A model generated the notes under the pieces. It was not told the origin of the DNA. It was given only the letters and a program-made list of their open reading frames with translations, and made no database searches. Made by a program: the position numbers and the translations under genes. Of a stretch of 64,000 nt of DNA, positions 1-64,000 are shown in pieces. Each line of letters starts with the position of its first letter. The first letter of the stretch is position 1. Source of the DNA: Iphione sp. A-MEVVRFRX5 (Eukaryota); NCBI GenBank assembly GCA_976226885.1, contig OZ320314.1, positions 34,596,001 to 34,660,000 on the forward strand. Reading direction: 5' to 3'.

Positions 1-3000
1 TTGGTAGCAGGCAGCCATTTCTGGACTATCGTTCTATGTAGATACAGTCAAAAGGTTCTGAACACCACCTATCTATTGATGATACAGGTGTCAGAGGCTA
101 TAATTGTCATTGGCCTTCCTTACGAATAAAAACGTGTCTGGTGATAGATGCTGCATCCCCCTAATCAATCCTTAGCAGAGAACTGCGCTGTTTCTAAGAT
201 ACAAGGTGATTTAAGTAGCCTTTGTATGCTTCCGCTTCGTAGCACAGAAATCGTACGAATGGACGCGACTTCAAAGCGGTTTGACGATGTGCCCAATTGA
301 TGAGATAAGTTTAGAAATTGGATTCAATCCTCACACAACCTCCCCGATCGACTAAGCGGGTGTGGCCGTGTTGGGCGAATATAAAGTTCAGTCAGCATAA
401 ATTCTCCCCTCTTTCCCTCCAAAAATCGATATTCACACCTGACCAGGTCATCAAAGGTCGCCAGGTAAGATGCAGCGGCCAGTGAGAGGTGTCAGGTGCC
501 AAGGCCTCCGCACCAAACCCCCCACTTGTACACATATTTATTTCAAACACTGCACATTAAAGTTGCACGGGTATTGATTGCAACCAAGTCATCTAGTGCA
601 AACCGTGGCAGGGTTAAAAACTCCAGAGGTCAGATCCACCACCGTTTAGTTCTTTTTTGTTGGAAAAAAAAGTTTTGAAAAATGGGGAACGATAAAATAT
701 TCAAAGTGTTGTAATGGAAGAACAGGAAACACGACATGTTGTCAGCATGTTATGCAATGGAAAGGGTAAACTCACCCCCCTTCACTTCCATCCTCATTAA
801 AGGTCAACACCTAGGTCGGAAGGGTTACAAAGGACGGGTAGGCCTAATGGGGATTTTGCATTTTGAACCTGCCTCCAACCATCTTAAATGTGCACTTTTG
901 CTCGCACTCCTCCTTTATGCAAGGTCCGTCGGTCGCACGCGAGAAGCAGTTTTCCCAATTCGGACTGTCAGAATTTGCGTGTTATTGATGGCCTTGCAGG
1001 AGGGGTATGTGTTGATGTGACCTTCCTCCTAAATGCAATGAGTGGTATGGAAAAAGATACGGTGTTGTGGGGTGATTCATTTGGCAGCAGGCCGTTCAGA
1101 AATACTGGCTAGCGCCGCGGACGACAGCGTTAAAAGTCTGTTCAATAACCAACTGCGACATACAAGCATCATACTAGATCATACGTCTGATTCGCCTTTA
1201 ATGTGAACGTACCACCGTTCTGCGTTATCACACAATATGCTCCATCTCAGAAGGATATTTTCTTTTTTTTTCCGAAACATCCCATTCACACTTTTAGAGC
1301 GAACGCTAAGACGCAAGGGTCGTTCGAAGAGATTAAATCCCTCTCAAAGCTTTCTTATTACCCGTTGCCAGCACCTTCTGTTCATTCCCACGCTGACCCA
1401 TTGGTAAATAAGGTCACATCTTGAGCTGTATTGGTCGGTGTACAGAATCATAAGCTGGAGACGTGCCATGTGTATTGTATGAATGTAACCTACCGTGCTG
1501 CACATGGAAATATCCCACCAGCAAGCCGACAACACGAAGAATGAATATTTAAATTGAAACGCGGCAGAAAACACCGAAAGGGAGTAGCCTTTATGCAGGC
1601 CTTCCGGCAAATGAAGCCATTACGTCTCCCAAGAAGCCACTTGAGAAGCCACAGCATGTGTACGCAAACATTTATTCTGTCGCCAAGATGGGGCACTTGG
1701 CAGGAGGGAAAGGAAATATGAAAAAACTGGCAGATTTCCATCCTAAGTAGATTGGGGTGGAGAAAAACGCAAACATGTTATCGATTACCTTGGGGGGAGC
1801 ATTGTTAAAAACGGTGCCTTTTCATTCTGCTCGATTGGCAACGAATTGAAGTGTTGTGGCGAAAAACAATAATCACAAGCGCGAAAGGCATGCTGGAGGA
1901 AGACAAAAAAGGGTGACGCGGGGATTCAAAAGTGAACGGTGCAATAAAATCTAATCACCCTAATAACTGCTTTTTATGTATGGGTTGGAAAAAGGCAAGC
2001 AAGCGTAAGTATTCCTTTGCTACCGGCCAGCTACAGCGTAGTGGGGTTGATAGAAGAAAATTGACTTGGCACCCGCAGCTAGCAATATGATGCCTTTTGA
2101 TTTACGCCTTGCCCTTTCACTGTTCTTCATTTATATGAATAATATGGCTGCGCTGTGATGACCATTTCAATGAATTATTGAGTTCTCAGGGATTGAAATC
2201 ACAAATTTAATGAACCATCATGGGACGTTTTACGTTTATTCCTTCTCTGTGGAACAATAAACAAGCCCAGAATCCATGAATTCGACAATCGAAATGAATC
2301 ATGTAGATGGACCTCACAAGGCAAAACAATGGTAAAGAAATATAAGAGGGAAATGGCCATAGTAGCACATTTGGGATTTGCAGCGTCCACTCATTCTGTG
2401 TAGGCTGTCCAGTTTAGATTTCATCCAATGTGTGGGGGATGCGCGTATCTTATTGGATTATAAAGGGCGCATCAATCATACTTGAGGAGACCGACGGGTC
2501 AGCATCCATATTTCATGGTCTACACTCGTCCTAAAACTGACCCGACTCGAATTTGCTTACCGCCCATGGTCACTTCGAGTCGCCTGCAGAAAGTAGATTT
2601 GGCTGCTCCGCGGGGCTTTCATCTTTTATTGAGCCTGCCATTGATTTCAAATTTGTTTATTACTGTATTGGGCGATGCGTAACGCAGGGGTTAGGGCCGA
2701 CTTGGTTTGAAAAGGTCGATTGGCTGCACGTTCAGTCCTTTGGACTGGATATCTCAAAACCCTGGAGGAAAGGAGGAGTAGGCTCTCTGGACGCTGAGGT
2801 TGCCGCGTCTCCGTGAACTGCCCTCCTCCACGGCGAGTGCCATCAATTTCAAATCTGTTTATTACACTTCGCATTAAGATTTAACATGGCCGCTGCCTCT
2901 AAGTGATATCCGTCCACATCGGGCGGCCTCCACCGAAATGGGGTCAGAAAATGGGTCGCGGCGACCACTGATGGAGTACATTTCCAGTTCGATTTAGCAT

Positions 3001-4999
3001 TCATATTTCACAGTAAAATCCCCGTCGTTCAATTGCTTTATGCTCCCGGGCTGGTGCGGCAAAGCCATTGCCCAGGCCCGATCTAGTGCCGATAGAGGAA
3101 GGTGATTTAACATATAAATCTCCCAACAAATCCCCCGTGCAATTGGGGGGAGGGAACATCCATTCGCTGACCCGCCCGGCAATGGGAATGAAAAATTAAG
3201 AATGCTTTATTTTGGGCAGCAACGTGATGGGTCGGCAGAGGTTGGGCGCCCATTCGAACATGTCGAGCTGGTCATTAGGAGGTGGTGTATATTCATCACT
3301 GTCCCCGCGGCTCAGCGAGAAGGTGACCAAACAAAATAATGATGGCTCCCGAGCCGATGATTGAGTCCAACCAAAAGCTGATCCCTGGGAATCTTAGATA
3401 TTGGGACGTGGCGTCAACACAGAGAATGCATTGTAGATTGGCATAAGTGCATGGCTGATGCCACATAACGCATTTTGCACACTGCCCGCTGGGACAATGT
3501 AGTGCGGCCCTACGTGCACCTAATGCTATGATAGTGTGTAGGGCACCGCCCTCCCCCCTCCGCGCCCGATAACTAGTGCTGACAATTGACTAGAATAGAG
3601 CCGGCAGTCCATATTCATGAGGCAAACATAGGCACGAGTGTTTCTGACATTTCTCCAGTGTTATCAGTTGGGATGATGGTCTGCCGCCGCAGACAGAAGT
3701 GTAAGCCGGCAAAGAAATTTTCAGCGACCTTTTCTCGATGTCAGCACACGCTGCCAATGGGTTGTGTCCTTTCCTGCCGAATGCATCTCAGACAATTTCT
3801 AGAAACAGCCAAACGAGTCCCAATTTCCAACACACGTTCGGCCGGCAGCGACGAGAAAAAGTCATTTTTCAAATTCTTTCGGATCTAAAGAGGTCAGGCA
3901 GGCACGACCATCCAGTCTTGATTAATATCTGGTTCTATAAGGGCGTACATTCCCCTACTGAAATATTAACTATGCCAGGTCAGACCATTGTAACCTTGCC
4001 TGGCACATTAGGCCGACAAAACGGGAGAGTCGGGCAGACCTTCAAAATTTACGACCGGGGTGTTTGTGTGCGATGAATTAACAAAGTAGATTTGGGTTTC
4101 GATTCGCCATTCATATTTTATAGCGCAGCCATCTAAATTGGATCGGGAAAATTTATTTATGCCGGTCTTGGGGTTATTGGACAAAGGAGCGTGGCCTTGC
4201 CTTGTCTTCCATAACGTCATTTAAATTGACTTGGCCAAATTTATGTTCGCAAGGTTGCGAAAATGGGAGGCAGCGGCCGACCCAATCTACGGGCAGCGGG
4301 CAAATTTAAAATCACGTGAGGGGTGAATATATCACGTGGCACCCATCGGGGAAGATGAATTCATGCCAGACATTTATAGAAATGGAAGGAGCGGTCGGAT
4401 GATTTGCATGTAGTTAGATGGAATCAGAGGACTACCGATGCATTCCAAGTGCTACGAAGTCTGATGAGCTGATAAAACCTTAGCATGCGCCACTGCTTCA
4501 GGCATTGCACAAATCCAAGAAATCTCGTCTTTAACCAAGCCTTGGCTATGTTTAGAATGAACATTTGCAATGAATGTAGAATCAGTTTTCTTAGAATTAG
4601 CATTAACAGTATTTTTGTGATTTTTTTTAAATGAGGGTTGTTAGCTTCATTCAACGGAAGACAGCCTCCACGCTAGTATTCTAGCAACAGAGACGTGGTT
4701 GACCAAATAGTGAGAACAAGCTAACCCTTGAGCCTTCTTCTCTTCTACATTCATTAGTGATTGCGGAGACAATACAGAAACTTCTCAATCCGGTTATCTG
4801 CCACTCTCACGGGCGGCTAAATCAAATCGACTACACCCCATACATATTCATACGGGCACTCTATGATTGATTAAAATTCCTGGGGCCAGAAACCCCCAAA
4901 AATCACCATCGTGCTGTCACTGTGGAGTCTTGCATTTCATTCACCATGCTTCCATAGCTACCACTGCAAATGTTACCATCTTCAGCGTAGCTCGTTGGC

Positions 5000-5830
5000 C
5001 TAGTTTGTGATCGTGTCGCCCGACTCATTCGCTCCTCCTCCCCTCCCCCCCACACACACCCCGCCGAAACCCACCACATGCCCCCCCTCCCCCCAGAAGC
5101 AGCCCCCAATCACTACGACTTCCTTGCGGCAATAGGGTAGCCGTCGGCTCGACCCTCCGGAGACAGACATTCGTCGTCTCACGGCACGGTGCCTTAACGG
5201 TCGTCGACCGAGCCGGGAATCTTGGTGTATTAATGTGGCGAGCGCCATTTCAATAAAGCTTGAGTTACTACCGAGCATGACGTGAGGGTTTGGTACCATT
5301 AGAGGTCAGCAGCAGCCGCCCTCCTCAGCGTCGAACCCACCTCCTGGCAGGCTGGTGGCGTACGTACAGAGGTGCCGCCACCACCGCCACCACCACCACC
5401 GCAGCACCCCAATCTGCGCGCTACCCCCGGTGGCTTCCTCGGCCGTGCGAAGCGTGTGCCCTCTGCCGAAATTGAACGCCGGCTTGAAATTTAATGACGC
5501 GCCAACCAATGAAGAGATGACGTGACGCTGGCAGCGGGCGGACTCAGCCAAAGGCCAACCGTGTTCATTGTACGCCGGACACATTCCACCAAGCGGCTCA
5601 AACCCACAACGTCGCCGCCGCCACCGCCCGTTTTCTCCAGCAGTTGCTGCCTGTCAGGCGCCAAAAGGCACATTTCATGCGAAATGTCAAAGAAATGATT
5701 CGCCCGCGTCTTATTGGCATTCTGCGTCTCCTATCAGCCGCTGGAATTAACAGCGACGGTATTGTCAACTCGCAGGCTGGTCTGACGCCGCCGGGTGCCT
5801 TGCATACAGGACGGTGCTGCCGCATGTTCT
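5000..5830. promoter_or_regulatory. Enhancer/promoter-like GC-rich island
   Basis: CpG-rich. CCAAT 5506-5510, TGACGT 5518-5523 and GGGCGG 5536-5541 lie in tandem; no convincing coding frame. Confidence 0.35.
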
Positions 5831-5930
5831 GAAAACCAACCTGGAAGACAAGCAGCGAAGTGCCCAAGCCTCCTATGGGAAAAGGTCTAAAACGACGCGG
5901 AAGAGAGTGCGAGAATATGAAAGAGACACT

Positions 5931-5983
5931 CAGACAGACAGACAGACAGACAGACAGACTGACTGACACAGACAGACAGACAG
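5931..5983 (+). repeat. (GACA)n microsatellite
   Basis: cagacagacagacagacagacagacagactgactgacacagacagacagacag. Confidence 0.95.
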
Positions 5984-8900
5984 AGTGAGACAGAGAGTGA
6001 GAAAGCGCATGAAACATAAACAGCACACTTTGGGCAGAGGATATCTTGGCAAACTGGGACTAGTGCACACATACCAGGGAACCTAATCACTTGTCAGGCA
6101 AAACAATCAAGCTGGCAACTCTATTGTTGTCCAGGTGAAACACAGATGACAGCAGGCGCTCGCCACCTAGACATGTTCAAATATTGGCCGATGAATACAA
6201 TCTAGAGCTCTATAAGCTCACTCTCAACTTTACAAATATTACGTATAGAGTCGCAGTGGTTGTCTCCCTAGTGAAGTGGGGTTCGCCCGCGATCCTGTCA
6301 ACGCGCTGACACCGGCGACACCAGAGATTCGGGTGACGTCACCTCGTGCAAGCATGAATGCTGGTTGGTTGAGGTGAACCAGATATGCGATAGCTGCTTC
6401 TGATGCGACCATTGAAGTACTTTACGACAACCTACCTTTCATATAGTGACCTCTGATACATACACGTGCAAAGGCTACTAAGATGTTTCATTTACTGGGC
6501 AATATGTCACCGGTATAACATTGCTAACAATAAGAATACCTACATGAGGAATCCATTCACCCATCTTTGTGTATCTTGAAATTTTCCAAGAGTACATCAT
6601 TTAATTAGTCCGTTGGTTGCCGTGCTGTTTGTGACCACAGAATTTGAATCGCATTTACCCTTAACACATAACACTAAAAGTAGCGATATTTTGCTTTGAG
6701 CTTGTACTCATGTCACAGTTTAAAAAAGGACGTGTTTTCAAATGGCACTCATGTTATGAAACAATATGCATATTGGATATATGGACTGCTGCTCTGACCA
6801 CATGTTCAAGAGAACATGTACATAAAATAAGGTGGTTATAGCCACACCCGATTTCTTTCCTCGACCCTCCTAGAATATTGACGTCAAAGACCTACACGGG
6901 TTTTGGGTCATTTAGAAAATAAATAATACAGAGTCAGCAAGAACATTTTTTTAAAATATGGGGAAAAAATTACCAAATATGCAGGAACATAATTACGAAT
7001 CAAATACATGCACAAATTCCAGATAAATCAAACGTATACAACCTGGTCAACCACGTTATGTAACTCATGTATGTCTTATGTAAAATAAAAGAATCGGACA
7101 CGGCGTATATGGCGGAGAGAGGGAAAACAACGTTTCGAAGGGCAAAACCTCAGGCCAGGTCGACCGATGCTAACTATCAGCGTTTTGATCATGGTCTGTT
7201 CGGCATGATTTGTCATCATGACCGAACCCGTACACGTTGTGCTGTGATTGAGGCAAGGCCGAAATATCAAAGTCTTGCGTGCGCTACACCATTTCTTAAT
7301 TGGCGAAGTCCCACAGCGCTAGACACAATACAAAACAGCTGCTGGGTTTCCTTAGATTATGTTCCAGGCAAATTTTTGCCGAACAGACCCGCCACGGGAA
7401 TAGAAGCGACACAAAAAATGGCTCGGAAGGCGTTGACAGAGGTGGAGTTTTGCTACAAGCAAGAGCTGCTACGGTATATTTTTTAGATATTTTTTCCCCT
7501 AGCTTGTTTCGCTAGGGCGCGGTGGAGATTCTGATCTCAGATTTATCAGAATTTTGCGGGGTACGATTAATTTCGTTTTCTATACTGAATAGCGTTGCGA
7601 GGGAAAAAAACTTATAGGGCAACAAAGCGGAGTGCAAAACGAATTGATGAAACTTGTAACGGTAGGAACCAGCATAGTAAATATAACTACTCATCGTTGC
7701 CTTTAAATACATGCATATGAAATAGGATGAGAAAATATCATTACATCGAGGTACACGGAGTGATCGGCTTCCCTCAGCAGGGCTACATCGGTGGAGGTGT
7801 CAATTCTATAAGCAAAGTCTTATTGCATTTGTCACTCCGTCAACTACAAGAGGATCGTTGCCCAGACTGCTGCGCCTGTTTGACTAAAAGCAGAGTGCGC
7901 GGCACTGCCTGATTGCAATCACGATGCGTGAAGCTTGTCCCTTTGAGAATTAGTCGTCTGTTTAGCCTTGGGTTACATTGACCAAACTTTAAAAGCCACC
8001 AAAATACACACAGAGGCTCCGCCTCCACAAGGCATATCGCATGGTATACCGCTTCCTATCAAGCCATCATTGTTTCGGGTATTTTGATCTCGCTCAAAGT
8101 ACACATCCGCACACAATGGCCTGAAAGCCCTCGAGGAAGATGGATTCAAATTGCCTTGCACTAAGCAGTTACCTTTGCAGTTTATGTAGCCGCTTGGTGT
8201 TGCGCGGGTTGGCACTGACTGTCTGTCATGCCATTGTCGCATCAATACCAACCACTTGTCCTCTGACGATTGCGTGTGCCTGCTGATACTTAGTCATAAA
8301 TTTAGCAGCGGCATCCCCCCCCCCGCCTTACTCTACCCCCAAGTTCCCTGCCCTCTTCTTCTGAAATTGAAATTAATCACAACAGCGACTGGCTGATTAA
8401 TCATGACTTGTTTTTGGCGTTGGTTTCTGGCATCCCACTTAATTGGAACGGGATCTTTACCCATTTCCGCCCGCCGCTGCTAAAGACTTCCGCGGCCTTT
8501 AATGGCAGTGGCGCCTTTAAGAAAAATTCGACAATTTGCCGGCATCGTTTGAGAAAGATCACAGGTGGAAATGTTCTGTCAAGTTACGTAGAATTGCTCA
8601 ATACCGTTGACAGTACGGTACACTTGACAGTACACTTTATAATGTTATACGACGGCTCATCAACAACCGCATTCCCTATAGATCACTGCATTACAGGGTA
8701 CACTTCTCAGATATTGCACTTTTTCTCCCATCTGTTCCTAGGCAGGATACTCACTGCAGTAGCGAGAATGTAACCATGCGCAAAGGGCCCTTGGATCATA
8801 TCTTAATAAAGCAATGAGGCATTCATGTCCAGTTATCTTGTTTTTTACAAGTGTGATAAAATGGTGAGAGCACACACTTTTAAAGCTAGAACTGCTCCAA

Positions 8901-8996
8901 TAATACGTTTACGTGGACCAGTTTGCCTATTGTGGGGAATGTGGACACGGGGTTCGCAAGCTAGCCACCGGCGGTTTAAATATCTGTCTGTCTGTC

Positions 8997-9143
8997 NNNN
9001 NNNNNNNNNNNNNNNNNNNNNNNNNNNNNNNNNNNNNNNNNNNNNNNNNNNNNNNNNNNNNNNNNNNNNNNNNNNNNNNNNNNNNNNNNNNNNNNNNNNN
9101 NNNNNNNNNNNNNNNNNNNNNNNNNNNNNNNNNNNNNNNNNNN
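8997..9143. other. Assembly gap (147 N)
   Basis: N run, preceded by TCTG repeats. Confidence 0.98.
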
Positions 9144-12100
9144 TACCATGTAAGGGCCTGTGTGTTACACATCGCCACTACAGAGCGAGCACTCCATGAC
9201 ATCGTCAAATTTGATCAGCGCTGCGTCGTCTTTTATTACTGTGCCTTGTTTGCAGGCTTTTTCCTTGGGCGGCAGACATCAGGCAGTAAAAGATGCTCGC
9301 AGCTATCTTTCTTACCGAAAACCAGGGCGATAGAAGAGTATGGATTGAAAGCAAGAGCCCCTCTTTTTTCACAAAGTAGCACAGAGAAGCAGGCATGCAC
9401 TTAGCGCGACTGGCTATTTGTTTTCACTGACGGCAGCAGAGTGGATAAATACAGACGATTGTATTTCACCTGAGAAGAGGGAGAAATCACCAAAAGATGG
9501 GTAATCATGGAATTGGCGTTTGCGCTGCGGCTCAGATTGTGAGGAGATAAACCCAGCCATCCTTTTATTTCGAGAATATTTTTTTTCTCCCGTTGACTTT
9601 TCCTTCGGTAGCTGACAAGGTATTCGCACGCATACAAAAAGGGAGATGATAAGGAAAATAGAGTCTCTTTTGTGCGAATCAATTATTGCATGTCGTAGGC
9701 GAAATTAAGTAGCCTTCGTGCTGTGTTTATACAGGCCTGTCATATCTTCCGCCTTGGCAAAACTGCGCGAAATATAGAACAGCAATCCCATCCCGCACTA
9801 AGCCTGCCATTGCATATCCCGACATGCCGGGCAATCGAAGCTCAGCTCCTGTGACACATTCATCGGCCAACTTTTGAATAATTGTTTCAGCCTATTTCTC
9901 TTCCAAGACACAAAGTATGTGCGCAATTTCACTTTATGGTGTTTGCACTTGTGCTTGAGACTCACCGGCATAAAAGTAATGGGCACGGTTGCCGTGACAA
10001 CGCAGCCATATTGGATCGGAATGCGGCCCTCATAAACATGTTGATGTCACCGTTTTATTAAAATCGGTGCTATGAAAATGTCAGTGTGCTGCCCAGCACC
10101 CCGACACATGGGGCGGGGCCTCGGCCGTTTTTATTGGGCCTGAGAACATACAAACCACGTCGGCCTCAGTCCGAGGATCGTGACGGGGGTCGGCCCTCTC
10201 CTGGGCCTGGCCAAGATGAAGACCTCCAGCCTCTCCTCCTCCTCACCCTCTCAGACCTGTCCTTCCCTCCTCCCTAGCAACAGGTCATTGGGTCTCAGAA
10301 GAAAGGATTTGTCTGCGCCACTGCAAGAGACACAGAGGTTTCAGGGAGAGATGCATATCCCCCGCCCGTATCGAGCTTTCATCGAATACATGGAGGACGC
10401 CTCAAAGGCCCCCCCGTCGACGAGTGAATTGCTCAAGTTTCTCAGTTGCATGCATGAAATGACTAAAGATGTCGAAAATATGTGATATTTTATTAACCAG
10501 AGTATGCCCTCACAATAACAGAATATGTGGCGTGAATGAGGCTTCTTCTCAGGAGCAATCTTCATATAAGTAAAACAAATAACATTACACACATACTTAG
10601 ACGAGTCCTTTGTCGGATCAACCATCGACAATTTTCTGAATACTCTTCGTTCGGTATACAGGAATTGCCACCACGATTTTTTGTACCGCAATGACATTCA
10701 GGGGAGGAACATCCAATTTATGCCTGTGGAGCCTCGCTCGAGCCACGTAGATGGCCTACCGGTTAGTGTGCTACACATGTATGCATCATATGTCATATCC
10801 CTATCACCAAACTGTCTCCCGTCCCTGGTTCTTACCTGTACGTTGAATTCATACAGTCTCCCTAGAACGTTAAACGATTTCCGTGTATACTTGTACATAC
10901 ATGTATACGTACAGTGGAATGTCATCTTCAGAGTAGATTAGGGGGGAGAGGAATCAGGAGAGTTACTCGGATTGGCTTATTTTCGATTTCGTTGACTAGA
11001 AACGAGAACATGCTAGCTTGAAATCAGAACAAAGCCAGTTGCAAAGGAGAGCCAGTGAGTAGAAATCAGGAGATTGAGGTTGTATTCGTGCAGTACACAT
11101 TTAGCTCGAGTTGCTCTACTGAGCTCCTCTCACCTGATGAATCATATTGTTCAACGTTGTTCACCGGAGTCACCTGTAATACGATGTACTATGGCGAGTT
11201 AACCGGGATAGGCTTCATTCAGAAATAATCTTAGAAACTGTTGCCCCCTAAATGAGTTAAAATCAGTGAATCTGTGTGTTCTTTGTTTCGAACACCATAC
11301 ACTTGAAACAATGAAATCTACTGTAAATCTATCAACACATGTCTATCGGAAATATGCAAATGTCAAGAATGTGACAGCTGTATACAGTACCCTGCTTTTC
11401 ACATGCCTATGTCTGACTTGAGCACTACTTATTGCAGTAGGTTTACTTCCAAGCTCTGATACTCAGAGCTCTTACTGCTACTGCTAACCTCGGATCACTC
11501 CCTCTGTTCATTTTCTCATTGATCATTCAAGAATGTAAGTTCTGATTAGAAACTGCTTGGGGAAAAGCTGAAGTTCAGCAGTTTATAATGTACTATGTGC
11601 CATATGAGGCCCGGGGTAATAGTGTAACAAGTTGACATTTTGTAAGCCACATCTTTGCTGGGTTCAGTGTATGAACACCGAAAGGTCAGAGTTTGCCTCT
11701 GACAGAATTCAGAATCAACAAAAGCCGATCCCGATGCTATCAATGCCAGAGTTAATCTTGAAAGCTGAACTGAGCGGTCTGTAAGATGTTTAACTAGAGT
11801 AAAGTCAGCACTTGGAGAGAGCTAGGAGGCTGACGTTATATGACGCATATTCGAAACTGCAAATGTTGTGGTTAGTGACTGTTCTTCATACCATGTTCTG
11901 ATTGTATGCTATGCGAATGTCACCATATTAATAATACCGACATTTTGGGCAAGTTGACTGCCACGGTCCAGGTTCCCTTGCCAAGCTATGAGTTATACAG
12001 TAGGGATGAGTGACCCTACATTTCTGTATGTATTACTGGAAATTATTACCCAAATAACCGTTAGAAACAGCTATAATAACTTTTCTCAGAAATTCCGAAA

Positions 12101-54200: not shown

Positions 54201-55098
54201 CGTCTTAAAAGCAGGCAGACAATGATGTTAAGTGAAGGCGCTATTTATCTTGCGTCATTAAGAAGCAAAGAGGCGCTGAGTGAGGGAGGCAGGGCGATAG
54301 AGAGAGACACACGGCGAAAAGGACGCAGGCTGTAGTTTCGGCGGCGACCGGCAGGTGGTGCACTCAGTCTCGTCGGCGGTCGCGCACAACGTCACCTCTT
54401 CCTCCATTAAATCAACAACTTTCATTTGCCGGGACCGGCGAAAAAAGCGAGTTTCACTGCCATAAAACATGCATGGGGTAGTTGAACAACAATGAGGGTT
54501 GGCATACGCCTGCAGTCTTTCTTCAGCAGTCGAGTGTAGAAATAGACGCCCATGGAAGGAAAGTGCCCCACTTGAACTCGGAGCATCGCCTAGCGTCAAG
54601 CACCAAGCGGTAATCAGTTCGGGCATGTAGTCTAGGCCTCGAAATCCTTCAGCGGCACGTTCTTAGCCTGTTCTACAGGTTAGACGCCATGCTCTGGAGG
54701 AGGCAGGTATCCGAAAAATCCACGTGCATTTCCCATGAATGACACATGACATTATCCTGAAAGTTAATAAGACCCTACAGATTGACATTTCTGTGTCATT
54801 TTCATTGTGGCAGTCTCTTACATTTCAAAACATCATATCCATAGAGACGAAAATACGAGGAATTTTTATCAGTACTCTTATAGATATGGTATTTCAAAAT
54901 AAAAAAGGAAGTCGACGTCTGAGGACTGTAGTCCCCCATCAGCCATTCAACTAAGCTCGTTCTGCTCTGAGTCCTGTTGGGTGAACATATTATGACATAG
55001 ATACAATTGTCAGACTGGTTCTAATACACACAAACGCATTCACACATGCACATATAAACACACACACATCATATTGAAATACAGTAATTGCACCCCCA

Positions 55099-55291
55099 AA
55101 TTACTTACAATGAAACAGAAATTGGCCAGTAGCAAGTGTTCATATCGGAAAGTACCCTATTACAATATCAGCTCATGTCAAACAATACTTGGCCATTTAT
55201 AAGAGCTACTGGAACATGACAGAGGGTCGGACGGTTGGACAGAAGCAATCCTAAGCCCACCCCCCTACTGACCCAGTGAGGCGGGGGGCAA
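55099..55291 (+). mobile_element. Hairpin-terminated non-autonomous dispersed repeat, copy 2
   Basis: AATTACTTACAATGAAACAG...GACAGAGGGTCGGACGGTTGGACAG...CCTAAGCCCACCCCC...GAGGCGGGGGGCAA; homologous to 14223-14401 and to the ends of the duplication B units. Confidence 0.6.
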
Positions 55292-58245
55292 TAACTGCAA
55301 AGAAAGGTCATTACAAATTAAAAATTTGAGGACTTTCTTAATTAAAGCCTTATTTTAATGTTCATGTGTTTTCGTGTCCATGTTTAGCATCATGCTCTTT
55401 TTTGTATTTACTGCTAATTACTACAGTGTGTTGGTGTACCTACTATGTCAAACACAACTCCATGTTTCAGAATGGAGTATGTTGCAATTCGGACGGAGCA
55501 CGGATCTGTGTTAGAAGCAGATGAAACAAAAAGGCCAATTCCTGCATATATGTCCATGCATATGTATGTCAAATTTGCCTTTCCTTTAACGGATACTAGT
55601 ACACTTGTCACACCCGCATATATGTAATAGCCATATACTAAATAAACACAAAGAACTGTTTAACAAAAAATGTTCAGTCATATTGAAACATGGAGCCACA
55701 GGGACACACCATACGCTTGAAGATTAGTCCCATCGGAGCTACAGCGTGAAATCCAAATTAGTCCCACACATAACTTGAAAGGTGAAGGCATTAAAGCCGA
55801 AGCGATTTCAGGCTGACTGCCGAGCAGCAGCGTGCAGCACGACAACAGCCGCTAGTGCCGAAGATAAATGGTAACTGGCGGCGGCGGCAATGGCTCCCCA
55901 AGTTTATTTCACATTTTAAACGGTTCGCACCGACAGCGTAATCAACCCACTCATCCCGCTAAGCGCTGGGGCCTTATTAGCCTTCATAAATATAATTCAC
56001 AACTGTAATTGGTGAACAACCCCTCTTGGTATTTTTTCATCCTCGGAGCTGCCTCTGTAACACAAACGGTTTGCCACACGACTCAACCAGACACCGAATC
56101 TAATTGGATTTCATCATTTTTTTTAGCCGGCAGCATCGCGACTTTTTTTTTCGCGCGCCTAAGTGAGATTTAAGCAGTATTGGGCGGCGGCGTTCATCCC
56201 ATCGCTCGATCCTAATGACTTTCAATGGGTTTTGTTTTTGCTGCGCTTCCGCCTTAACGCCAATGTGGTAATCTGTTAAGTGTATTTAATGTGTGCTAAG
56301 GAAAAAAACAACTCCGCAGCCTTTTTTTGAGTCTCCTCTGATAAGCCTCTTCATCAGGGCATTTGAGGGAAGCCTCGGCTCTTGTGTATGATCTTAAAGA
56401 GGCAGCAGGGGCTGAGCTGCGGCATGTGCGATGATGGATATGTCTCCTCAATTGTAATCCAATACAGCGCTCAGTGGCTGACAGAGGGGATTAAAATCTG
56501 ACGAGTTAAAGGCGCCTCCATCGAACTGACACTCCAGCGTACCGCTCCACGTGCGGGCGTGCAATGGGAGGGTGGGGGGGGAGGTGTGGCGGCAAGAGGG
56601 GCCGCCTGCCTGGCACGAGACAGGCAGGCCGAGGCGCTCTTAATATATCATAATCAGAGACGCAACACCCACGGCCGACTTAATGACATAATTTAAACCG
56701 TTTAACTTGAATGAAGTGAGCGTTAAACAGCCACATCTTGACATAATTGTCACTCGCTAGCGTGTGAGGATCCAACGATACATATCGCCCCTGTGGGCTG
56801 CAAGTGCTCTAAATTAAAAGAGAGGCACGGCCCTTATCAAGTACCTCTGGTCTATGTTAGAAAAAAAGCAATTTGTCAGCAATTGAGGTTGAAGTAATAT
56901 ATTTAAATGCGACTTCATACGCAAAGGGAAGAAAAAACTGTAAACGTGTGCGCTTTTATCGTCTTGAGACAAGTTGTAAAGGATTTTCGGTAGTGCATCA
57001 ACAATGATAAATTGACTTAGTTTAATTGCTCTTAGGGGAAGCGATTAAATCTCATGTAAAGCCTTCTGGACGTTTTTGCCATCGCTACATATGATACGTA
57101 AGTAATGAAATATATTTGACTTAATGAAGCTACTAATGGAATAAAACGTCACCCCTGTTGTTATACATGGAGGTGGTATTAGTAATGATATCAATCTTAA
57201 CTTACCTTGCAGGATTTATATCACTAAGGAAAATATCAAATTTGCATATCAGTCAGAAGATTACATCTCAGACCATTAAAGTGCGACGCCACTGTTGTAG
57301 GAGTCAATATCACATGGCAATATGTCACACCTTTAACTTAATTATTCACTTTTGCGCAATGTCTATTTCGGGTGATAAAATGGGGATTTATGTTTTGGTC
57401 GGTGGAATATTACCAGAAACTTTATACGTTTGTCTCTGAGTTTCGAACTACATGTACAGTTGTATTCACATTCATTGTTTTACTCTACTACTTTGATGTG
57501 CATGTCTTTGGTTTTAAACCCATTTCCTCGTGTCCCATTACTTTCCAGTGCATGATATCTTTTGAGCAAAAGGTCTGATCAGCAGTTTGTAATGGTAGGA
57601 GGAAGTACATGTATTCTGAAACAGTTCATTGCAGTTAGAGACAAAACAGTCCGAGTTAGAAAAATCTACATGTACTCATTTTCTAGGTTATGATTTTTCA
57701 CGTTTGACAACCTCTGTAGCAAAACAGTAGAATAATATAAATCAAATGTGTACATGTAACAAACATTACCTCCTCCTTGAACCGAAGTGTAGGCTGACAC
57801 ATTCCACATGTTTGTGCTGTGTTACGAGTGATTATCACTAAATACAGACAACTCTCACTTAAAGTTCTAATTCAGTCAGGATGCACCCCCTATACTCGCA
57901 ATGGACTCAAGACCGTGTATATACCTAGGTACTAAACCCGGTATTAATATTCATTAGATTAGGAACTGGTAGCTCATTGGATGAGGAGAAGTAATCAATA
58001 TTTATTGCATTTCCTTAAATCTGTTTGGACCTGATAGGTCACATGGCTCTAAGATGATGGTTTCTTTTGAAAACAACAACAAGAACTCATTCATCATTCT
58101 GCAGGTAATATGATGACTAATTTAGGCTTCAAAACCTTTGCATTTCACATAATCATATCAGAATCCCCAAAACCTCGAATCAGAACTGCAATTAACGATT
58201 TTTTTTTGTGTACTAGTCCACTAGACTAGACACTCTATGCCATCG

Positions 58246-58400
58246 TAAATTGCGTAGACCAGCTCACAGAGAGACCAGCCTGAGATGAGAAGAGATCTGA
58301 CAGAACCAACGGCACATATTTTTATAAAAGAGACACCATAGGAGACCAGACTGCAAAAGAGACCAAGTTTTTCCAGTTCTCATCGAACTATATGTAACTG
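58246..58400 (+). mobile_element. Possible MITE fragment with repeated AGACCA subterminal motifs
   Basis: AGACCA recurs four times in about 120 bp (plus a GAGACACC variant), as in Tc1/pogo-derived MITEs. No TIR pair was found. Confidence 0.25.
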
Positions 58401-61189
58401 TAAATGTAGACTGCCATTTCTGAGAGATGCCAATCAAGGCGGTTATCTGTTAAACTACGACATTGGATACATACTGTACATCCTACACTATCCTTATACA
58501 TATTTAATGGTTTGTAGAATATAGAGTCGGAAAATTTTGAAACGCTGTGCATTTCAATGTAGTTAAGAGGAAGTAGTTTAGGGCTCAAGAGAGGAAGGAG
58601 GATCAAAGAACGACCTTTTGTAACAGGTCATGTATACCCCAAATACCGGCTTGGAATGCATCAAAATGCAGTGAATATTACTAACGAGAGTGCTATGCAA
58701 TAAGTATGTACATGATAATGTAATTTCAATAGTGAATCGTTCAATACGTGATGAAAAGCAAAAAAGAAAGAGAAGAGTAGTCTTTAAGCAGTGCTTAATA
58801 TTAAAAAAAAATCTTCCTAGTTAATCATAACAGATTTCATGACGACTTTCTCTCCCCTTTGATGGCACGGAGCAAATTAATGATAGAACTCAGGCTGGTA
58901 TTATTTGTTCACGAAAAATAAAGTATCAATCATATTTGATTTGATATATGACAAGTGTTAAACTGCAGGCATGTTGACGCAAGCATCAAATTTTATTTCA
59001 CAAAGAGCATGACATAATGCCAAGAGTATACACACATACTAAAATCTGAGTTTACGGCTAGCAGGGTTGCGACCAGGAGGTGAGGCTTTACGGTAGCTCA
59101 GTGGGGCAGGTGAACGTGTCATAGATCGGCCGTTACCTGCCACAAAGATCAAACCGCTCCATCACCCAACATTTTATCCCTGCGTTAACCCATCGGCCCG
59201 ACGTTAACCCGCCGAGTCAGCCGCCGCGAGGTCGAGGGTTTTGTGACAGTTGTGTGGATGCCCTTAACGCCACACTCCACCCCCAAGACCCTCGATAAGA
59301 AGTTGTTTGGGTGAATGAGGTGGGTGGGGTACAGGGACTGCTGGTTAACACCTGGCCTGGTGCGTACCTTTACCTGGGCCGGAAGCCTCCCTGCGCCAAG
59401 GCGCGGCACCCCTTGATTGACAAATTGGATCTGCAGGGGTGCTTCCCGTGCCCCCTGCGCTCCTGCCGCCCTCCCGCCGTTACTGGGAACCTTGTCTTGT
59501 CAGCGCTCAGTCTCCTGCCCTCACCATGCGTCACACACACACATGCACACACACATCAACCACTCACTATACGTATATTATAACCATGAATTCTCACAGA
59601 ATCTCTGCTCCCTACTACATATGGTCTCTCAGTAAAAAAAATAACCCAAAAGACTCGTTTGACCCCGGCGGTATTTTTTCACGTTCTGTATATACCAACT
59701 GGCCACAAGCTACAAGCGCCAGCGGCCGCGTGTCCAGCGACTCCCACCGGGGACCTTCAGAACTAATCTGATGGCAGGCCGCACAGGAAAGGACGGGGGA
59801 AAGTGGGGTTTTAAGCAGTGGAAAGCGACAGGCACACCAACTGTTTGTAGGTTTAGCGTGGCTGAAAAAGGCATCCGGTTAGCCAGATGAAAAGGTAGTG
59901 CAGCTCTGGGAATTGCCGCACGACAATGAAGACGTACGGGGGGAGCGTGGAGGTCGATCCTAAAGCGGGTCACTGACGGCAGAGGGCGCGAGGGCGCTGT
60001 AGCCATCAAGAGGCGATCAGCGCCGCCACGCCCCGGACCCTTGAGGGAAAGTGGTAAGGGGCAGGAGGATAAGAAAAACTATCGCCTGGCTTGACTACTA
60101 GTCTCACAGGTAGAGAGCCCTACAGCTGGTTTCCTGTTCGTAACCGAGCCACAGCAGGCTAGTGCGTGGGGGGGCTCTCTACCGCCTGCCGCTCACAACT
60201 TCACATCTCGGTTTAAAAAAACACTGCAAATGATTTATGAAGGGCATGCACAGCTCCCCTCGAAACTATCCACTACAAATGAACGTAAATTACGAATTAA
60301 ATGGAACCGCCGGTAAAAATGCCAATAACATTTTATAAAGTTATGCCATCCTTTCATCAGGTGCCTTTTTGTACAGACGAACATGGTGTATGCAGAGGGT
60401 CATTTTTTTCATCTCAGAAACTCTAGAGCCAGTTTCACATGTATCCTCTGACTTTTCATGCACAACAGTACATTGTTTATGCACCCCAATCAAGGTGCAT
60501 GAAACCTGTCTGATGATATAATACCAGATGTCCTCCTGCACTACTTTTCTATAGGATTTATCACTCTGCGTGACAACCTGTCTTTGACTGATTGGAGAAA
60601 CATTGACAGATCTATTAGCATAACACATGTGCATGTGAACGAGCAAGTTAACTTCAATGTACCTCCTGAAAGGTAGAACGGTCCGTTTGGTCTGAATGGA
60701 CAGACAAATACATATATGTGAAACCCAGCTTAAAAGAGTAGACCATCGTAAATATAGTACACGTATGTGTATATTACCTGACCTTAAATTAAGGAGTGTA
60801 ATCAAATTCACTATTTCTGAACATTTACCCATCAAATTTGCTGCATTTACCCATAAAATTTGTCGCTGTTTAGATGTGTTCTCTCCAACCTCTCCACATA
60901 TTTTTACTTGATCCAATGTATGTTCACACACATTGCGTTTTACAACATATTCATATAACCCATCCAAACACATCCACAAAGGACACCCCGGTGCATGAGG
61001 TTCTGGGACAATTTTTCAGGCATGGCAACACACTGGACGCTCGTACAAGTGTATACATGTATACACTGTACATACTGGAATATGTTGTTACATAAAACAC
61101 AGACTATACGATTTATCTACTCTCGCAAACTTGAATTATTACAAACATAGTGGCCTTCAATAAACGTACAACGGCTGGACTTGTGTATG

Positions 61190-61469
61190 CTGCTTATCGG
61201 TGGATATGGTCGCGTTTCAGTCTTCGAAGCGCCGCTTCCGATACGATCGTCAAACGTACTGAAATTAGACGGCAGTAGGAGATGACGGCTACAAAATGGG
61301 CGACGCGCGCGCCGACACTGAGTAGAATTTTACGCGCATTTGCTGACATGTCAGCACTACAGGCTGTCACAGAGGTGCTGTCATCGCAAGCTGACGAGCG
61401 GCGCGACGTCCGATTAAAAAAGAAAAAAAAAAAAGAATCTCGGCCCAAGACAAGACGACGACGGTGAGC
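61190..61469 (+). promoter_or_regulatory. Candidate CpG-rich promoter / first exon of a plus-strand transcript
   Basis: CpG-dense. ETS-like GCTTCCG at 61234-61240, YY1-like AAAATGGGCG at 61293-61302, ORF from ATG 61282/61348 ending KKKKKKESRPKTRRR, and a candidate donor CG|GTGAGC at 61463/61464. Confidence 0.3.
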
Positions 61470-61767
61470 GGCAAGTTATACTTTCATACGGACGTTCGAT
61501 CATCATGCTCTATGCCCGTCTCCTCGTCGGTCCCGCCTGCTCCTGCTCTGGTATCGTGGCAATTTGCTAAAGCTATATGGTGTTTTGTAGTGAGAGACGA
61601 CCAAAAAGATGGAAGGGATGGCGGCAGCACCACCAGGGAAGGAAGGGACGGAAGAAGTGGAGAGGAGGGGGGGGGGCAGAAGGGGAGGGAGAGGAAGTGG
61701 GAGGGGGAAGCGGGGTTGTTCAGGGAAGGGCGGGTGTGTTAGGATACTGGGCCAAGGCTGCAAATCC

Positions 61768-61777
61768 TGATTGACAG
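61768..61777 (+). promoter_or_regulatory. PBX-MEIS/PREP decamer
   Basis: Exact TGATTGACAG. Motif match only. Confidence 0.35.
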
Positions 61778-62389
61778 ATGGCGATGAGGGAAAATTAACT
61801 TCAACAGGTGAGAGGCATGGAGGAATCATCTTGCACGCAACCGTTTCAATGACTGGCGTCTGATGGCCACTGACAGTCCCCATCATTGGATTAGACTGTC
61901 TCCAGCACGATGCTGTACTCCTCCACTACCATGCATACAGATTACAGATTAGTCATAATATAATATGTCTGTACGCACTGTACCATTTCCAGATATTTTA
62001 CCTCTGACGATGTCATGTCTCAGATTCTAACAGAGGACTACACACATTAAATGTATGTGTATCAAATAAAACCCAAGATCTTTGTTTTATGGCTGATAGG
62101 TTGGCTTTGTCACTCGTATCATAAGAACATGTACATGTACACTCGTAGTTTCGGAACAATTGTCCCCTTCTTCCGGAGGTATTTCCGAATGAACAAGATG
62201 AATTTCAATGACAAGCTGCATGGGCATGCTTTCCCCAGGGACAGCCATTCTTAAGCACAGTACATGTACTACTTTATATTTGCTGAAATGTCTATTGACC
62301 AGGAGGAATTAACCTTATATTATTCAGAAGGGGAAAATGACGTTGACACGGTTCTATGTAAGGGATTATATGTTTCTAATAAATCCTAC

Positions 62390-62429
62390 ACGAGTGACAA
62401 TTTTGGCAAGGCCGGGTAATGCACCTGGT
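62390..62429 (+). mobile_element. Possible non-autonomous Helitron 3' terminus
   Basis: GGCAAGGCCGGGTAATGCACCTGG|T ends in CTRR followed by T and resembles recalled GCGAAGCCGGGTA...CTAG termini. Confidence 0.25.
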
Positions 62430-62608
62430 ATCAAGAATAAATTATTCTAGGAAATAAAATATTTATGTAACATAGCAACACCAAATCAGGCCTTACGTTG
62501 AATATCGAAATAATCATGCTAATGTCTCTATACGGAAAAACAACGGTAATGTAACTTCTACCATTTCACAAGTCATGTAGCCCCAACCCAGAGTGATCCA
62601 CAACTTGT

Positions 62609-62707
62609 AAAAAGGCTGTGGGTGTATAGGATTCTGTCCTCTATGCACAAAAAGACCCCAGAATCCTATTCGAAATAAGAGTAGGGGACAACCCTGGGTA
62701 TTTTGGT
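62609..62707 (+). mobile_element. SINE core fragment (MetaSINE-like)
   Basis: GCACAAAAAGACCCCAGAATCCTATTCGAAATAAGAGTAGGGGACAACCCTGGG resembles the recalled MetaSINE central domain (AAAGAACCC...TCGAAAAGAGTAGGGG...CCCGG). Assignment is from memory. Confidence 0.4.
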
Positions 62708-62789
62708 CTCTCAATTCTCAATAATAGATGATAGTATGCTACCCCAGGAGGATATGGTTGAGCCCAGTCATATAATAGGTGAATATCTA

Positions 62790-63158
62790 GTCCCTGGTAA
62801 AAGATACAATGAAATGAGCTGACATGTCGCCTTCGAGAAATTTACCGAAAATGTACACAGAGCAGTTGCAGAAACCTGCAGAAAACAATATGTGGGACAA
62901 ACACAAAATTCATTAAAAGTGAGGTTCAGTTCACATAAAAATGACATAAAGGAAAAGAAAGACACAACAGTATCTCGCCATTTCAACTCATGTCCCAAAT
63001 ACTCACCTGCAAAATGGAATGGGGTATTGATCTCAGTTTTAGAATTCTTCAGAACCCCAAACAATACCGATTTCAGGCAGGAACGCAAACGAATCGAACG
63101 ACGGTGGATCCATAGACTGAAAACTGTGATCCCAAGAGGTCTAAATACCATGGACTAA
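62790..63158 (+). pseudogene. C-terminal GIY-YIG endonuclease fragment of a Penelope-like retroelement (5'-truncated, upstream part degraded)
   Basis: Frame reads TCRKQYVGQTQNSLKVRFSSHKNDIKEKKDTTVSRHFNSC...ERKRIERRWIHRLKTVIPRGLNTMD*. It has the CxKQYVGQT motif, the conserved R (VRF..H), E (IERRWI) and GLN of PLE GIY-YIG domains. There is an in-frame TGA at 62820-62822 and no RT domain upstream. Confidence 0.85.
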
Positions 63159-63466
63159 CGCAGACTGATCCGATATGCTAAATATGTCATGCAACTGTAT
63201 TTTCATCCCATAGCATATGGAACAGTCAAGGTGCCTGTCTCCCAAATCAATGGATCGACTAGGTGCGGCCACGCTACACCTGCCCATCAACAAGACTACA
63301 CACCTAACGCTAGTCTTGAATTGGACCATCAAGTCCAAGTAGGGCCTTCCAAGCCGAGGACTCCAAGCAATTCAATTCCAGAAAAGTCATTGTATAAATT
63401 ACCACATTGACATTTGAGTCATACGTGCCAATTTTATACAGACGCATCACAAATCCTATTATGCAC

Positions 63467-63490
63467 CTGATGAGACACTCCAGTCGAAAC
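63467..63490 (+). ncRNA. Hammerhead ribozyme core relic in PLE 3' region
   Basis: CTGATGA-GAC-ACTCCA-GTC-GAAA-C. Core and helix II are present; I could not form helix I or a good helix III. Confidence 0.5.
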
Positions 63491-64000
63491 CACACTCTGA
63501 GTCTCTCAAATATCCCAATTAAGACTTGAGTACTGGTGTAACTACTTACAAACATCAGCCCCCCAGAAAACCATTACAACAAGGGATTACCAGTTAAATC
63601 ACACCAAAGATATACATAAGAGACTCCCATACCAACAGGAGACATGACAACCCCTCACCAGGCAACCATCTCTCCAATCAGAGTCTAAACTAAAAGAGTC
63701 ATTGACAATAGTTCCATCACTAAGACTCCCATTGTGATGTCAACTTACTGGTTTGGAACACAGGTCAAAGCATACCGTCATCAGGACAGTGTTGTGGTCG
63801 TGCACTCTCCGTCTTTCATCGTTTATTGAAAACATATACAGAGACGAAATGTCTCTTAAGTTGATGGTGATGTTCCCAGCTGTGATGTAGACCAGACAAG
63901 TAGCAAGAGTTCACCAGCGGTGAATTTAACCAGATCGTAAAATTTTCAACATCAACCCTTCCCTGACCACAAAAAAAATAGGGGTTTGAGTATTCCTAAC

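What the first reader, a model, noticed from the sequence alone, without database searches (positions are those of the whole stretch)
1..64000. CAAP1 stretched over more than 18 kb (possibly the whole 64 kb): candidate bystander gene of a genomic regulatory block
Seen: two short CAAP1 exons separated by an 18.1-kb intron, with no further CAAP1 exon recognisable in the 17.6 kb downstream or 28 kb upstream. The non-coding DNA is mostly non-repetitive and full of GC-rich islands with TAAT, TGATNNAT, AACAAT and TGACGT motifs. Established: housekeeping bystander genes with expanded, enhancer-filled introns mark genomic regulatory blocks (e.g. Elp4-Pax6, Lmbr1-Shh, Sowah-Irx), and human CAAP1 borders the 9p21 gene desert towards ELAVL2/DMRTA1. 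Inference: these introns hold enhancers of a neighbouring developmental gene, perhaps Elav or Dmrta, and the vertebrate 9p21 desert may descend from this arrangement.
Basis: partly seen in the sequence, partly recalled or inferred. Interest (0 to 1): 0.7.

Follow-up and report, generated by a model that had tools for sequence, protein, structure and literature searches.

The report
Stretched CAAP1 gene with conserved intronic elements
The whole 64-kb window lies inside a small housekeeping-type gene (CAAP1) of a probable annelid worm. Its giant introns hold at least 17 short non-coding stretches kept in order in a related species, as expected if they carry switches for a neighbouring developmental gene that is not yet identified.

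Summary
Observation confirmed, on the minus strand. Exon A (35815-36015) and exon B (17619-17703) each pass Pfam's CAAP1 cut-off. They are split at the same intron position as in molluscs and a hemichordate. The intron between them is 18,111 nt, counting a 169-N gap. No other CAAP1 exon is in the window, although the first exon, the SSSGTEE motif and the C-terminal ELELEMRARAI motif are strongly conserved in relatives. The gene therefore runs off both ends and spans more than 64 kb.

New evidence: 39 kb of a related species' contig aligns to window 20.7-53.7 kb only in 17 collinear non-coding blocks. These total 2.9 kb at 68-90% identity, and 7 of them exceed the exon's 75%. Third codon positions are only 60% identical. 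All six frames score alike, so the blocks are non-coding.

CAAP1 is also stretched in four molluscs (35-138 kb). It is compact in a nemertean, a hemichordate and two echinoderms (coding span 2-14 kb).

TGATNNAT is over-represented, and 3 of 6 TGATKGATGG sites lie in conserved blocks. AACAAT is not enriched.

Earlier, unchecked notes of this scan place elav 344-400 kb away. No target gene, enhancer activity or deep conservation is shown. Verdict: a plausible new candidate regulatory block with a bystander gene.

The parts
35815..36015 (-). CAAP1 exon A (67 codons, phase 0 at both ends); encodes ...DSDLDLNRELLAVGQYVHDREEMLEHMFRSISTKKLRAMLPESCK
   Evidence: PF15335 39.4 bits. Splice sites read. 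Profile E 9e-23. 75% identical to the exon of the relative.
17619..17703 (-). CAAP1 exon B (85 nt, ends in phase 1); encodes ELRLEELKAMCLEQLDMMSRKRILRILD(G)
   Evidence: PF15335 28.3 bits. Splice sites read. Profile E 7e-11. The chiton orthologous exon is 82% identical at nucleotide level.
17704..35814 (-). Intron between exons A and B, 18,111 nt including a 169-N gap; holds 7 conserved non-coding blocks
   Evidence: The same intron is 34.6 kb in a chiton, 17.3 kb in a scallop, 6.2 kb in an oyster, 3.6 kb in a hemichordate and 0.5-0.8 kb in echinoderms.
36016..64000 (-). Part of the intron 5' of exon A (more than 28 kb); no first exon found; holds 10 conserved non-coding blocks
1..17618 (-). 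Part of the intron 3' of exon B (more than 17.6 kb); no SSSGTEE or C-terminal exon; not covered by the relative's contig
20712..20788 (.). Conserved non-coding block 1 (77 bp, 73%; weak, but collinear)
24303..24544 (.). Conserved non-coding block 2 (242 bp, 68%)
28742..28911 (.). Conserved non-coding block 3 (170 bp, 82%; identical runs up to 26 bp; contains TGATTTAT)
33068..33304 (.). Conserved non-coding block 4 (237 bp, 79%; contains TGATTGATGG next to AACAAT/TAATTG)
33541..33734 (.). Conserved non-coding block 5 (194 bp, 73%)
33853..33980 (.). Conserved non-coding block 6 (128 bp, 86%)
34260..34308 (.). Conserved non-coding block 7 (49 bp, 86%)
37446..37739 (.). Conserved non-coding block 8 (294 bp, 76%; contains TGATTGATGG and CTGTCA)
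38935..38986 (.). Conserved non-coding block 9 (52 bp, 88%)
44582..44684 (.). Conserved non-coding block 10 (103 bp, 73%)
45742..45771 (.). Conserved non-coding block 11 (30 bp, 90%; short, but collinear)
47966..48129 (.). Conserved non-coding block 12 (164 bp, 75%; contains TGATGGATGG, which is TGATTGATGG in the relative)
50030..50560 (.). Conserved non-coding block 13, the largest (531 bp, 73%, E 1e-80; 1-2-nt indels that would shift any reading frame)
50900..50976 (.). Conserved non-coding block 14 (77 bp, 77%)
51102..51327 (.). Conserved non-coding block 15 (226 bp, 68%)
53215..53249 (.). Conserved non-coding block 16 (35 bp, 89%)
53473..53735 (.). Conserved non-coding block 17 (263 bp, 68%); the relative's sequence held here ends just beyond it
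20819..20987 (.). Assembly gap inside the A-B intron, so the intron length is an estimate
8997..9143 (.). Assembly gap in the 3' intron; its left flank ends in a TCTG microsatellite

Best explanation
Shown: the window lies wholly inside the CAAP1 gene of a probable annelid. Only two of the gene's exons are present, separated by an 18-kb intron and flanked by introns of more than 28 kb and more than 17.6 kb. These introns carry a collinear array of at least 17 short non-coding elements. Purifying selection has kept them, in the same order and similar spacing, in a related species whose neutral DNA no longer aligns.

Inferred: the elements are clusters of transcription-factor binding sites, that is, developmental enhancers. 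They include sites that resemble Pbx-Hox and homeodomain sites. They probably act on a neighbouring, tightly regulated gene and not on CAAP1 itself. That would make CAAP1 a bystander gene locked into a genomic regulatory block, with its introns kept long because they hold this regulatory DNA.

The target is not identified. The elav gene, noted 344-400 kb away on CAAP1's 3' side, is the only named candidate (about 0.2).
For: Gene structure.

Other exons absent, although their motifs are invariant in 10 orthologues from three phyla and present in the two closest full-length cDNAs.

The 17 collinear same-strand blocks (2,872 bp, 68-90% identity, 61 identical runs of 10-26 bp) against a 39-kb stretch of ENA contig ERZ26222911 ctg1019419. 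A reversed-window control gave 0 hits at 60 bits or more, against 11 for the real window.

Divergence: exon A is 75% identical at nucleotide level, and only 60% at third codon positions. About 92% of the intron DNA does not align.

Non-coding: the indels are not multiples of three, and tblastx scores are similar in all six frames.

The relative also lacks exon 1 and exon B within 19 and 20 kb of exon A, so intron size is conserved.

Mollusc CAAP1 genes are stretched: chiton 49 kb, oyster 35 kb, scallop 98 kb, abalone 138 kb. The oyster and scallop have no called gene within 10 kb on either side; the chiton has none upstream and one about 9.5 kb downstream.

Motifs: TAAT cores are enriched in the blocks (45 against 28.9, p 0.002). 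TGATKGATGG occurs 6 times against 0.7 expected, and 3 of those lie in blocks.

GRB criteria come from PMC3514665.
Against: Only one comparison species is available, and its identity and divergence time are unknown.

No expression, chromatin or contact data exist, so activity and target are pure inference.

The elav distance rests on unchecked earlier notes, and the 344 kb in between is uncharted. elav encodes an RNA-binding protein, not a transcription factor, so it is not the classic kind of GRB target.

The blocks are not found in other phyla's CAAP1 loci. CAAP1 is compact in the nemertean, hemichordate and echinoderms sampled.

TGATNNAT enrichment is spread across the locus and is not specific to the blocks.

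Similar GC-island, transposon-poor stretches are noted elsewhere in this genome, so that texture may be general.
Confidence: 0.5

Rival explanations
1. The conserved blocks serve CAAP1 itself, as intronic enhancers, alternative promoters, untranslated exons or splicing-control elements (for example recursive-splicing aids for giant introns). There is then no bystander relation.
For: The blocks lie inside the gene, several of them within 1.5-2.5 kb of exon A. No target gene has been shown.
Against: The conserved cores are AT-rich clusters of homeodomain-type motifs, not splice-site-like sequences. CAAP1 is regarded as a broadly expressed, non-developmental gene (established knowledge, not tested here). 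Orthologues work with 2-6-kb genes in a nemertean and a hemichordate, so the gene itself does not need this DNA.
Confidence: 0.2
2. The long introns are neutral bloat of a large genome. The aligned blocks are then chance survivors or slowly mutating patches between two species that are not very distant, without function.
For: Chromosomes in this genome are large: a note lies more than 75 Mb beyond the window. Other giant introns are noted. The divergence time of the relative is unknown. One transposon remnant is present.
Against: Third codon positions are only 60% identical, and about 92% of the intron is unalignable. Yet 7 blocks exceed the exon's 75% identity, reaching 79-90%, with sharp edges and identical runs of up to 26 bp. 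Order, strand and spacing are all kept. Few repeats or transposon traces were found.
Confidence: 0.12
3. The blocks belong to an unannotated nested gene or long non-coding RNA lying in the CAAP1 introns.
For: The window has no RNA data. The blocks cluster (33.0-34.3 kb and 50.0-51.3 kb), as the exons of a small gene might.
Against: There is no frame-specific conservation. The indels would shift any reading frame. Nothing matched Rfam at gathering thresholds over the whole window. No Pfam domain was found in the open frames that overlap the blocks.
Confidence: 0.1

Closest known systems
Genomic regulatory blocks with bystander genes (Kikuta et al. 2007; Irimia et al. 2012, PMC3514665), e.g. Isl-Scaper, Otx1-Ehbp1, Pax6-Elp4, Shh-Lmbr1
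   Same: A small non-developmental gene with several introns above 10 kb. Short, highly conserved non-coding elements lie inside those introns and are kept in order. The flanks are gene-poor in mollusc orthologues.
   Different: No target gene has been identified, no enhancer activity or contact is shown, and conservation is shown against one species only. CAAP1 was not found together with 'genomic regulatory block' in the paper library, and the supplementary lists of known pairs could not be read.
Vertebrate dmrt4(DMRTA1)-elavl2-caap1 conserved synteny at human 9p21 (PMC7689362)
   Same: CAAP1 and an elav-family gene lie on the same chromosome stretch. According to earlier notes, elav lies on CAAP1's 3' side; from memory this is also so in human.
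   Different: The distance here is about 0.35-0.4 Mb with unknown content in between. No Dmrt gene is noted. Linkage in the intermediate lineages (molluscs, hemichordates, echinoderms) could not be tested. CAAP1 is compact in the sampled non-vertebrate deuterostomes.
Bystander erosion as a source of vertebrate gene deserts (Touceda-Suarez et al. 2020, PMC7530604)
   Different: CAAP1 is still intact in vertebrates, so it has not eroded. The paper's main text does not mention ELAV, CAAP1 or DMRT.

Membership tests
[quoted passage not shown] | Match to the 63-residue CAAP1 domain above the curated cut-off | tested here: met
   Exon A scores 39.4 bits (profile positions 4-41) and exon B 28.3 bits (positions 37-63); the cut-off is 25. 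The exons were searched separately and were not joined.
[quoted passage not shown] | Orthologous exon-intron structure (domain split at ...LP.ILK | ..EELK...; exon B ends after ...IL.G in phase 1) | tested here: met
   The exon boundaries match those of chiton, scallop, oyster, hemichordate, urchin and crinoid genes.
[quoted passage not shown] | Full-length gene with the ADSTQ/K-rich first exon, the SSSGTEE motif and the C-terminal ELELEMRARAI helix | tested here: inconclusive
   None of these is in the window. They are expected outside it, but an incomplete or decayed gene cannot be excluded from this window alone.
Genomic regulatory block, bystander gene (criteria of Irimia et al. 2012, PMC3514665) | 1. 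A developmental regulator gene in conserved linkage with the non-developmental bystander | tested here: inconclusive
   elav lies 344-400 kb away according to earlier notes only. Vertebrate elavl2-caap1 synteny comes from PMC7689362. Linkage in other invertebrates could not be tested. The nearest neighbours differ between chiton, nemertean and hemichordate.
Genomic regulatory block, bystander gene (criteria of Irimia et al. 2012, PMC3514665) | [quoted passage not shown] | tested here: met
   Introns of more than 28 kb, 18.1 kb and more than 17.6 kb. The relative has at least 19 kb and at least 20 kb. Mollusc genes span 35-138 kb.
Genomic regulatory block, bystander gene (criteria of Irimia et al. 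2012, PMC3514665) | 3. Short, highly conserved non-coding regions in the bystander's introns | tested here: met
   17 collinear blocks, 7 of them more conserved than the exon, and non-coding by frame and indel tests. This rests on one comparison species, and no conservation across phyla was found.
Genomic regulatory block, bystander gene (criteria of Irimia et al. 2012, PMC3514665) | 4. Enhancers in the bystander's introns that act on the regulator's promoter; bystander and target expressed differently | not testable with these tools
   This needs ATAC-seq or H3K27ac data, 4C or Hi-C, reporter assays and expression data.

The most novel reading that the evidence does not exclude
elav and CAAP1 form an ancient bilaterian regulatory block. 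The CAAP1 introns of annelids and molluscs carry long-range elav enhancers (or enhancers of another neighbour). The same linkage persists as ELAVL2-CAAP1 across the vertebrate 9p21 desert. That would make CAAP1 a so far unlisted deep bystander gene, and it would give an RNA-binding-protein gene, not a transcription-factor gene, a block of this kind.
Probability: 0.15. Interest if true: 0.65.

Novelty: new member of a known kind. Interest (0 to 1): 0.45.

Why it matters
Clusters of conserved non-coding elements and bystander genes are well documented in vertebrates and flies. They are much less so in spiralians.

This locus offers a concrete, testable case: defined elements with coordinates, inside a simple marker gene whose exon structure is conserved across phyla. 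CAAP1 is repeatedly stretched in molluscs and in this worm, but compact in other lineages.

If the target proves to be elav, or another gene that is also linked to CAAP1 in vertebrates, the locus would document an ancient linkage kept by regulatory constraint. It would also bear on how vertebrate gene deserts arose.

If the target is lineage-specific, the locus shows that the same housekeeping gene can be recruited as a bystander more than once.

Tried and rejected
1. The gene is on the minus strand.

2. Further CAAP1 exons: tblastn with 98 relatives, motif regexes, composition scans, a 13-protein profile and the two closest full-length cDNAs all found none.

3. Deep conservation of the blocks: blastn and per-block nhmmer profiles were run against chiton, scallop, oyster, nemertean, hemichordate, urchin and crinoid loci. 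Only exon hits appeared; block hits were no better than reversed controls. No non-coding conservation was found among the mollusc loci or between the two echinoderm loci either.

4. Coding or RNA nature of the blocks: rejected. tblastx scores are alike in all frames, the indels shift frames, and Rfam gave no hit.

5. TGATNNAT as a mark of the blocks: rejected, 6 against 4.4 expected.

6. Listing the genes between CAAP1 and elav: the notes database holds nothing for that interval.

7. CAAP1 in published microsynteny or regulatory-block lists: no paper holds both terms, and the supplements are not held.

9. Naming the relative species: no name is available.

10. The word search found no annotated annelid CAAP1 carrying the Pfam domain, only a weak Helobdella hit.

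12. The large representative search was used before the word search. An exon-sized query cannot reach full-length relatives under the word search's length rule.

13. No human contig was fetched or compared.


Full report
**What is there**

The window is animal DNA: GC 0.45, CpG observed/expected 0.79, with two N gaps. Earlier notes of this scan call the genome a probable annelid worm.

- Exon A is 35815-36015. It has an AG acceptor and a GTAAGT donor and holds 67 codons.
- Exon B is 17619-17703. It has a polypyrimidine-AG acceptor and a GTATGT donor, is 85 nt long and ends in phase 1.
- Searched separately by reference, each passes Pfam's curated cut-off for PF15335 (39.4 and 28.3 bits against 25). 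Together they cover the 63-residue domain, profile positions 4-41 and 37-63.

The intron between them is 18,111 nt. That figure includes the 169-N gap at 20819-20987, so it is an estimate.

**The gaps**

Both gaps lie in non-coding DNA, at least 3.1 kb from any exon, so reading frame is not at stake.

For the 20819-20987 gap, conserved blocks on its two sides map to the relative's contig in the same order and orientation. That speaks against a misjoin. Two cautions apply: the left block is weak (45.5 bits), and the spacing differs (3.5 kb here, 6.5 kb in the relative).

The 8997-9143 gap follows a TCTG microsatellite. Nothing was available to check it against.

**No other exon**

An exon-sized query cannot find full-length relatives under the word search's length rule. 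I therefore used the representative search with exon A. It gave 98 hits. Cluster look-ups named several of them as CAAP1 of molluscs, hemichordates, echinoderms, a nemertean and arthropods.

An alignment of ten full-length proteins shows four conserved parts:
- a first exon (M..ADSTQ plus a K-rich tract);
- the exon A/B domain;
- an invariant SSSGTEE-type motif just after exon B;
- an invariant C-terminal E(I/L)LELE(M/L)RARAI.

A profile of 13 full-length proteins hits only exons A and B in the six-frame translation (E 9e-23 and 7e-11; next best 0.49). Motif regexes, composition scans and tblastn also find nothing. The same holds for tblastn with the two closest full-length cDNAs from the word search, P0127 and P0138.

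So the gene runs off both ends of the window. Its introns are more than 28.0 kb, 18.1 kb and more than 17.6 kb, and the locus spans more than 64 kb.

**Conserved non-coding elements**

The closest hit (P0001, 75% identical over exon A) lies on a 239-kb ENA contig, ERZ26222911 ctg1019419. Three look-ups gave 39,185 bp of it.

Against the window, every hit that is not a microsatellite is on the same strand and in the same order. These are exon A plus 17 non-coding blocks between 20.7 and 53.7 kb. The blocks total 2,872 bp at 68-90% identity and contain 61 identical runs of 10-26 bp. A reversed-window control gave no hit at 60 bits or more, against 11 for the real window.

The two species are well diverged:
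- exon A is 75% identical at nucleotide level;
- third codon positions are only 60% identical;
- about 92% of the intron DNA does not align.

Seven blocks are more conserved than the exon (79-90%).

The blocks are not coding. Their indels are 1, 2, 7 nt and so on, and tblastx scores are alike in all six frames. Rfam finds nothing in the window.

The span from the first to the last block is 33.0 kb here and 36.7 kb in the relative. The relative has neither exon 1 within 19 kb upstream of exon A nor exon B within 20 kb downstream. Intron size is therefore conserved as well.

**Texture and motifs**

The conserved cores are AT-rich motif clusters with ordinary GC content (0.23-0.51).

| Motif | Observed | Expected |
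|---|---|---|
| TGATNNAT | 92 | 53 +/- 8 |
| TGATKGATGG | 6 | 0.7 |
| TGACGT | 31 | 22 (marginal) |
| AACAAT | 57 | 58 (not enriched) |

- TGATNNAT is the most over-represented gapped 4+2 word that is not low-complexity, ranking 15th of 4096.
- Three of the six TGATKGATGG sites lie in conserved blocks. From memory, this decamer resembles Pbx-Hox composite sites. That is a lead, not a test.
- TAAT cores are enriched in the blocks (45 against 28.9, p 0.002). TGATNNAT is not (6 against 4.4). It is equally dense in the relative, so it may be a background property of these genomes.
- Internal repeats are few. The 100 longest open frames give one transposon trace, a GIY-YIG domain.

**Comparison across animals**

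| Species | Group | CAAP1 extent | A-B intron |
|---|---|---|---|
| Liolophura (chiton) | mollusc | 49 kb | 34.6 kb |
| Saccostrea (oyster) | mollusc | 35 kb | 6.2 kb |
| Ylistrum (scallop) | mollusc | 98 kb | 17.3 kb |
| Haliotis (abalone) | mollusc | 138 kb | not mapped |
| Lineus | nemertean | 2 kb, dense neighbours | not mapped |
| Ptychodera | hemichordate | 6.2 kb | 3.6 kb |
| Diadema (urchin) | echinoderm | coding exons span 13.7 kb (annotated range 83 kb) | 0.8 kb |
| Antedon (crinoid) | echinoderm | coding exons span 5 kb (annotated range 30 kb) | 0.5 kb |

The oyster and scallop loci have no called gene within 10 kb on either side. The chiton has none upstream and one gene about 9.5 kb downstream.

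The stretching is thus shared by molluscs and this worm, not by the sampled deuterostome invertebrates.

The worm's conserved blocks are not detectable in any of these loci by blastn or by per-block nhmmer profiles. Their best hits equal those of reversed controls, while the exon profile does find its orthologues.

**Neighbourhood**

The window's flanks cannot be read with these tools. Earlier notes of this scan, which I did not check, place an elav gene 344-400 kb before the window's start. That is on CAAP1's 3' side, next to AGBL4/CCP6. Nothing is noted for the interval in between, and no Dmrt gene is noted in this genome.

A paper reports dmrt4-elavl2-caap1 synteny as conserved in fish, reptiles and human (PMC7689362). 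I found no paper that links CAAP1 to regulatory blocks.

Irimia et al. 2012 (PMC3514665) give four criteria for such a block:
- long bystander introns: met;
- conserved intronic elements: met;
- a linked developmental regulator: inconclusive;
- enhancer action on that regulator: not testable here.

**Verdict**

The introns really do hold a collinear cluster of constrained non-coding elements, and the gene is stretched in a lineage-consistent way. This makes CAAP1 a credible bystander gene of a regulatory block (confidence 0.5).

The target is unknown; elav rates about 0.2. Activity is untested, and conservation is shown against one species only.

The proposed ancestry of the vertebrate 9p21 desert is not supported by the compact hemichordate and echinoderm genes.

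This is a new candidate member of a known kind of arrangement. Its value is as a testable spiralian example.

Noticed in passing
window 62823-63155 (+): An open frame with a GIY-YIG endonuclease domain (Pfam E 5.7e-6; ...KQYVGQT...), of the kind carried by Penelope-like retroelements. No reverse-transcriptase frame was seen upstream, so it is probably a decayed fragment. It is the only transposon protein trace among the 100 longest open frames.
   Followed up: partly
window 45121-45203: Another first-stage note calls this an intact minimal hammerhead ribozyme. Rfam found no match in 44800-45500, even at E up to 1, and none at gathering thresholds over the whole window. The stretch is not among the blocks conserved in the relative.
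   Followed up: partly
window 12967-14224: GA and TG microsatellites (12967-12998, 13461-13502), a 255-bp unit duplicated in tandem (13725-14224, 83%) and a dispersed 135-bp repeat pair (13003-13137 and 13478-13609). This is the only internally repeated part of the window.
   Followed up: no
window 8983-8996, left edge of the gap at 8997-9143: The sequence runs into the gap as a TCTG microsatellite, so the gap probably replaces a simple repeat.
   Followed up: no
L003 (Liolophura sinensis CM072726.1), about 54612-56500: The annotated chiton protein P0034 continues after ...RILRILDG into 'LTWDWSTTLSF...', unlike all other orthologues (which have ADP..ISSSGTEE). The model probably reads through the donor of the exon that corresponds to exon B.
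   Followed up: no
L010 (Diadema setosum OZ188198.1) and L011 (Antedon mediterranea OZ206125.1): The annotated CAAP1 gene ranges (83 kb and 30 kb) far exceed the span of the coding exons (13.7 kb and 5 kb). The rest must be distant untranslated or alternative 3' exons. Gene range alone therefore overstates the stretching in echinoderms.
   Followed up: partly
word search: Among 65 CAAP1-like proteins of 174-699 residues, none from an annotated annelid genome carries the Pfam domain; there is only a weak Helobdella hit. One possible reason is that annotation pipelines miss or split this stretched gene in annelids.
   Followed up: no
L001, L007 and L008 (ENA ERZ26222911 contig): Most 'genes' called on this animal contig have several in-frame stops under the standard code. 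They are artefacts of a prokaryote-style caller on intron DNA, so product tables for such contigs carry no gene information.
   Followed up: no
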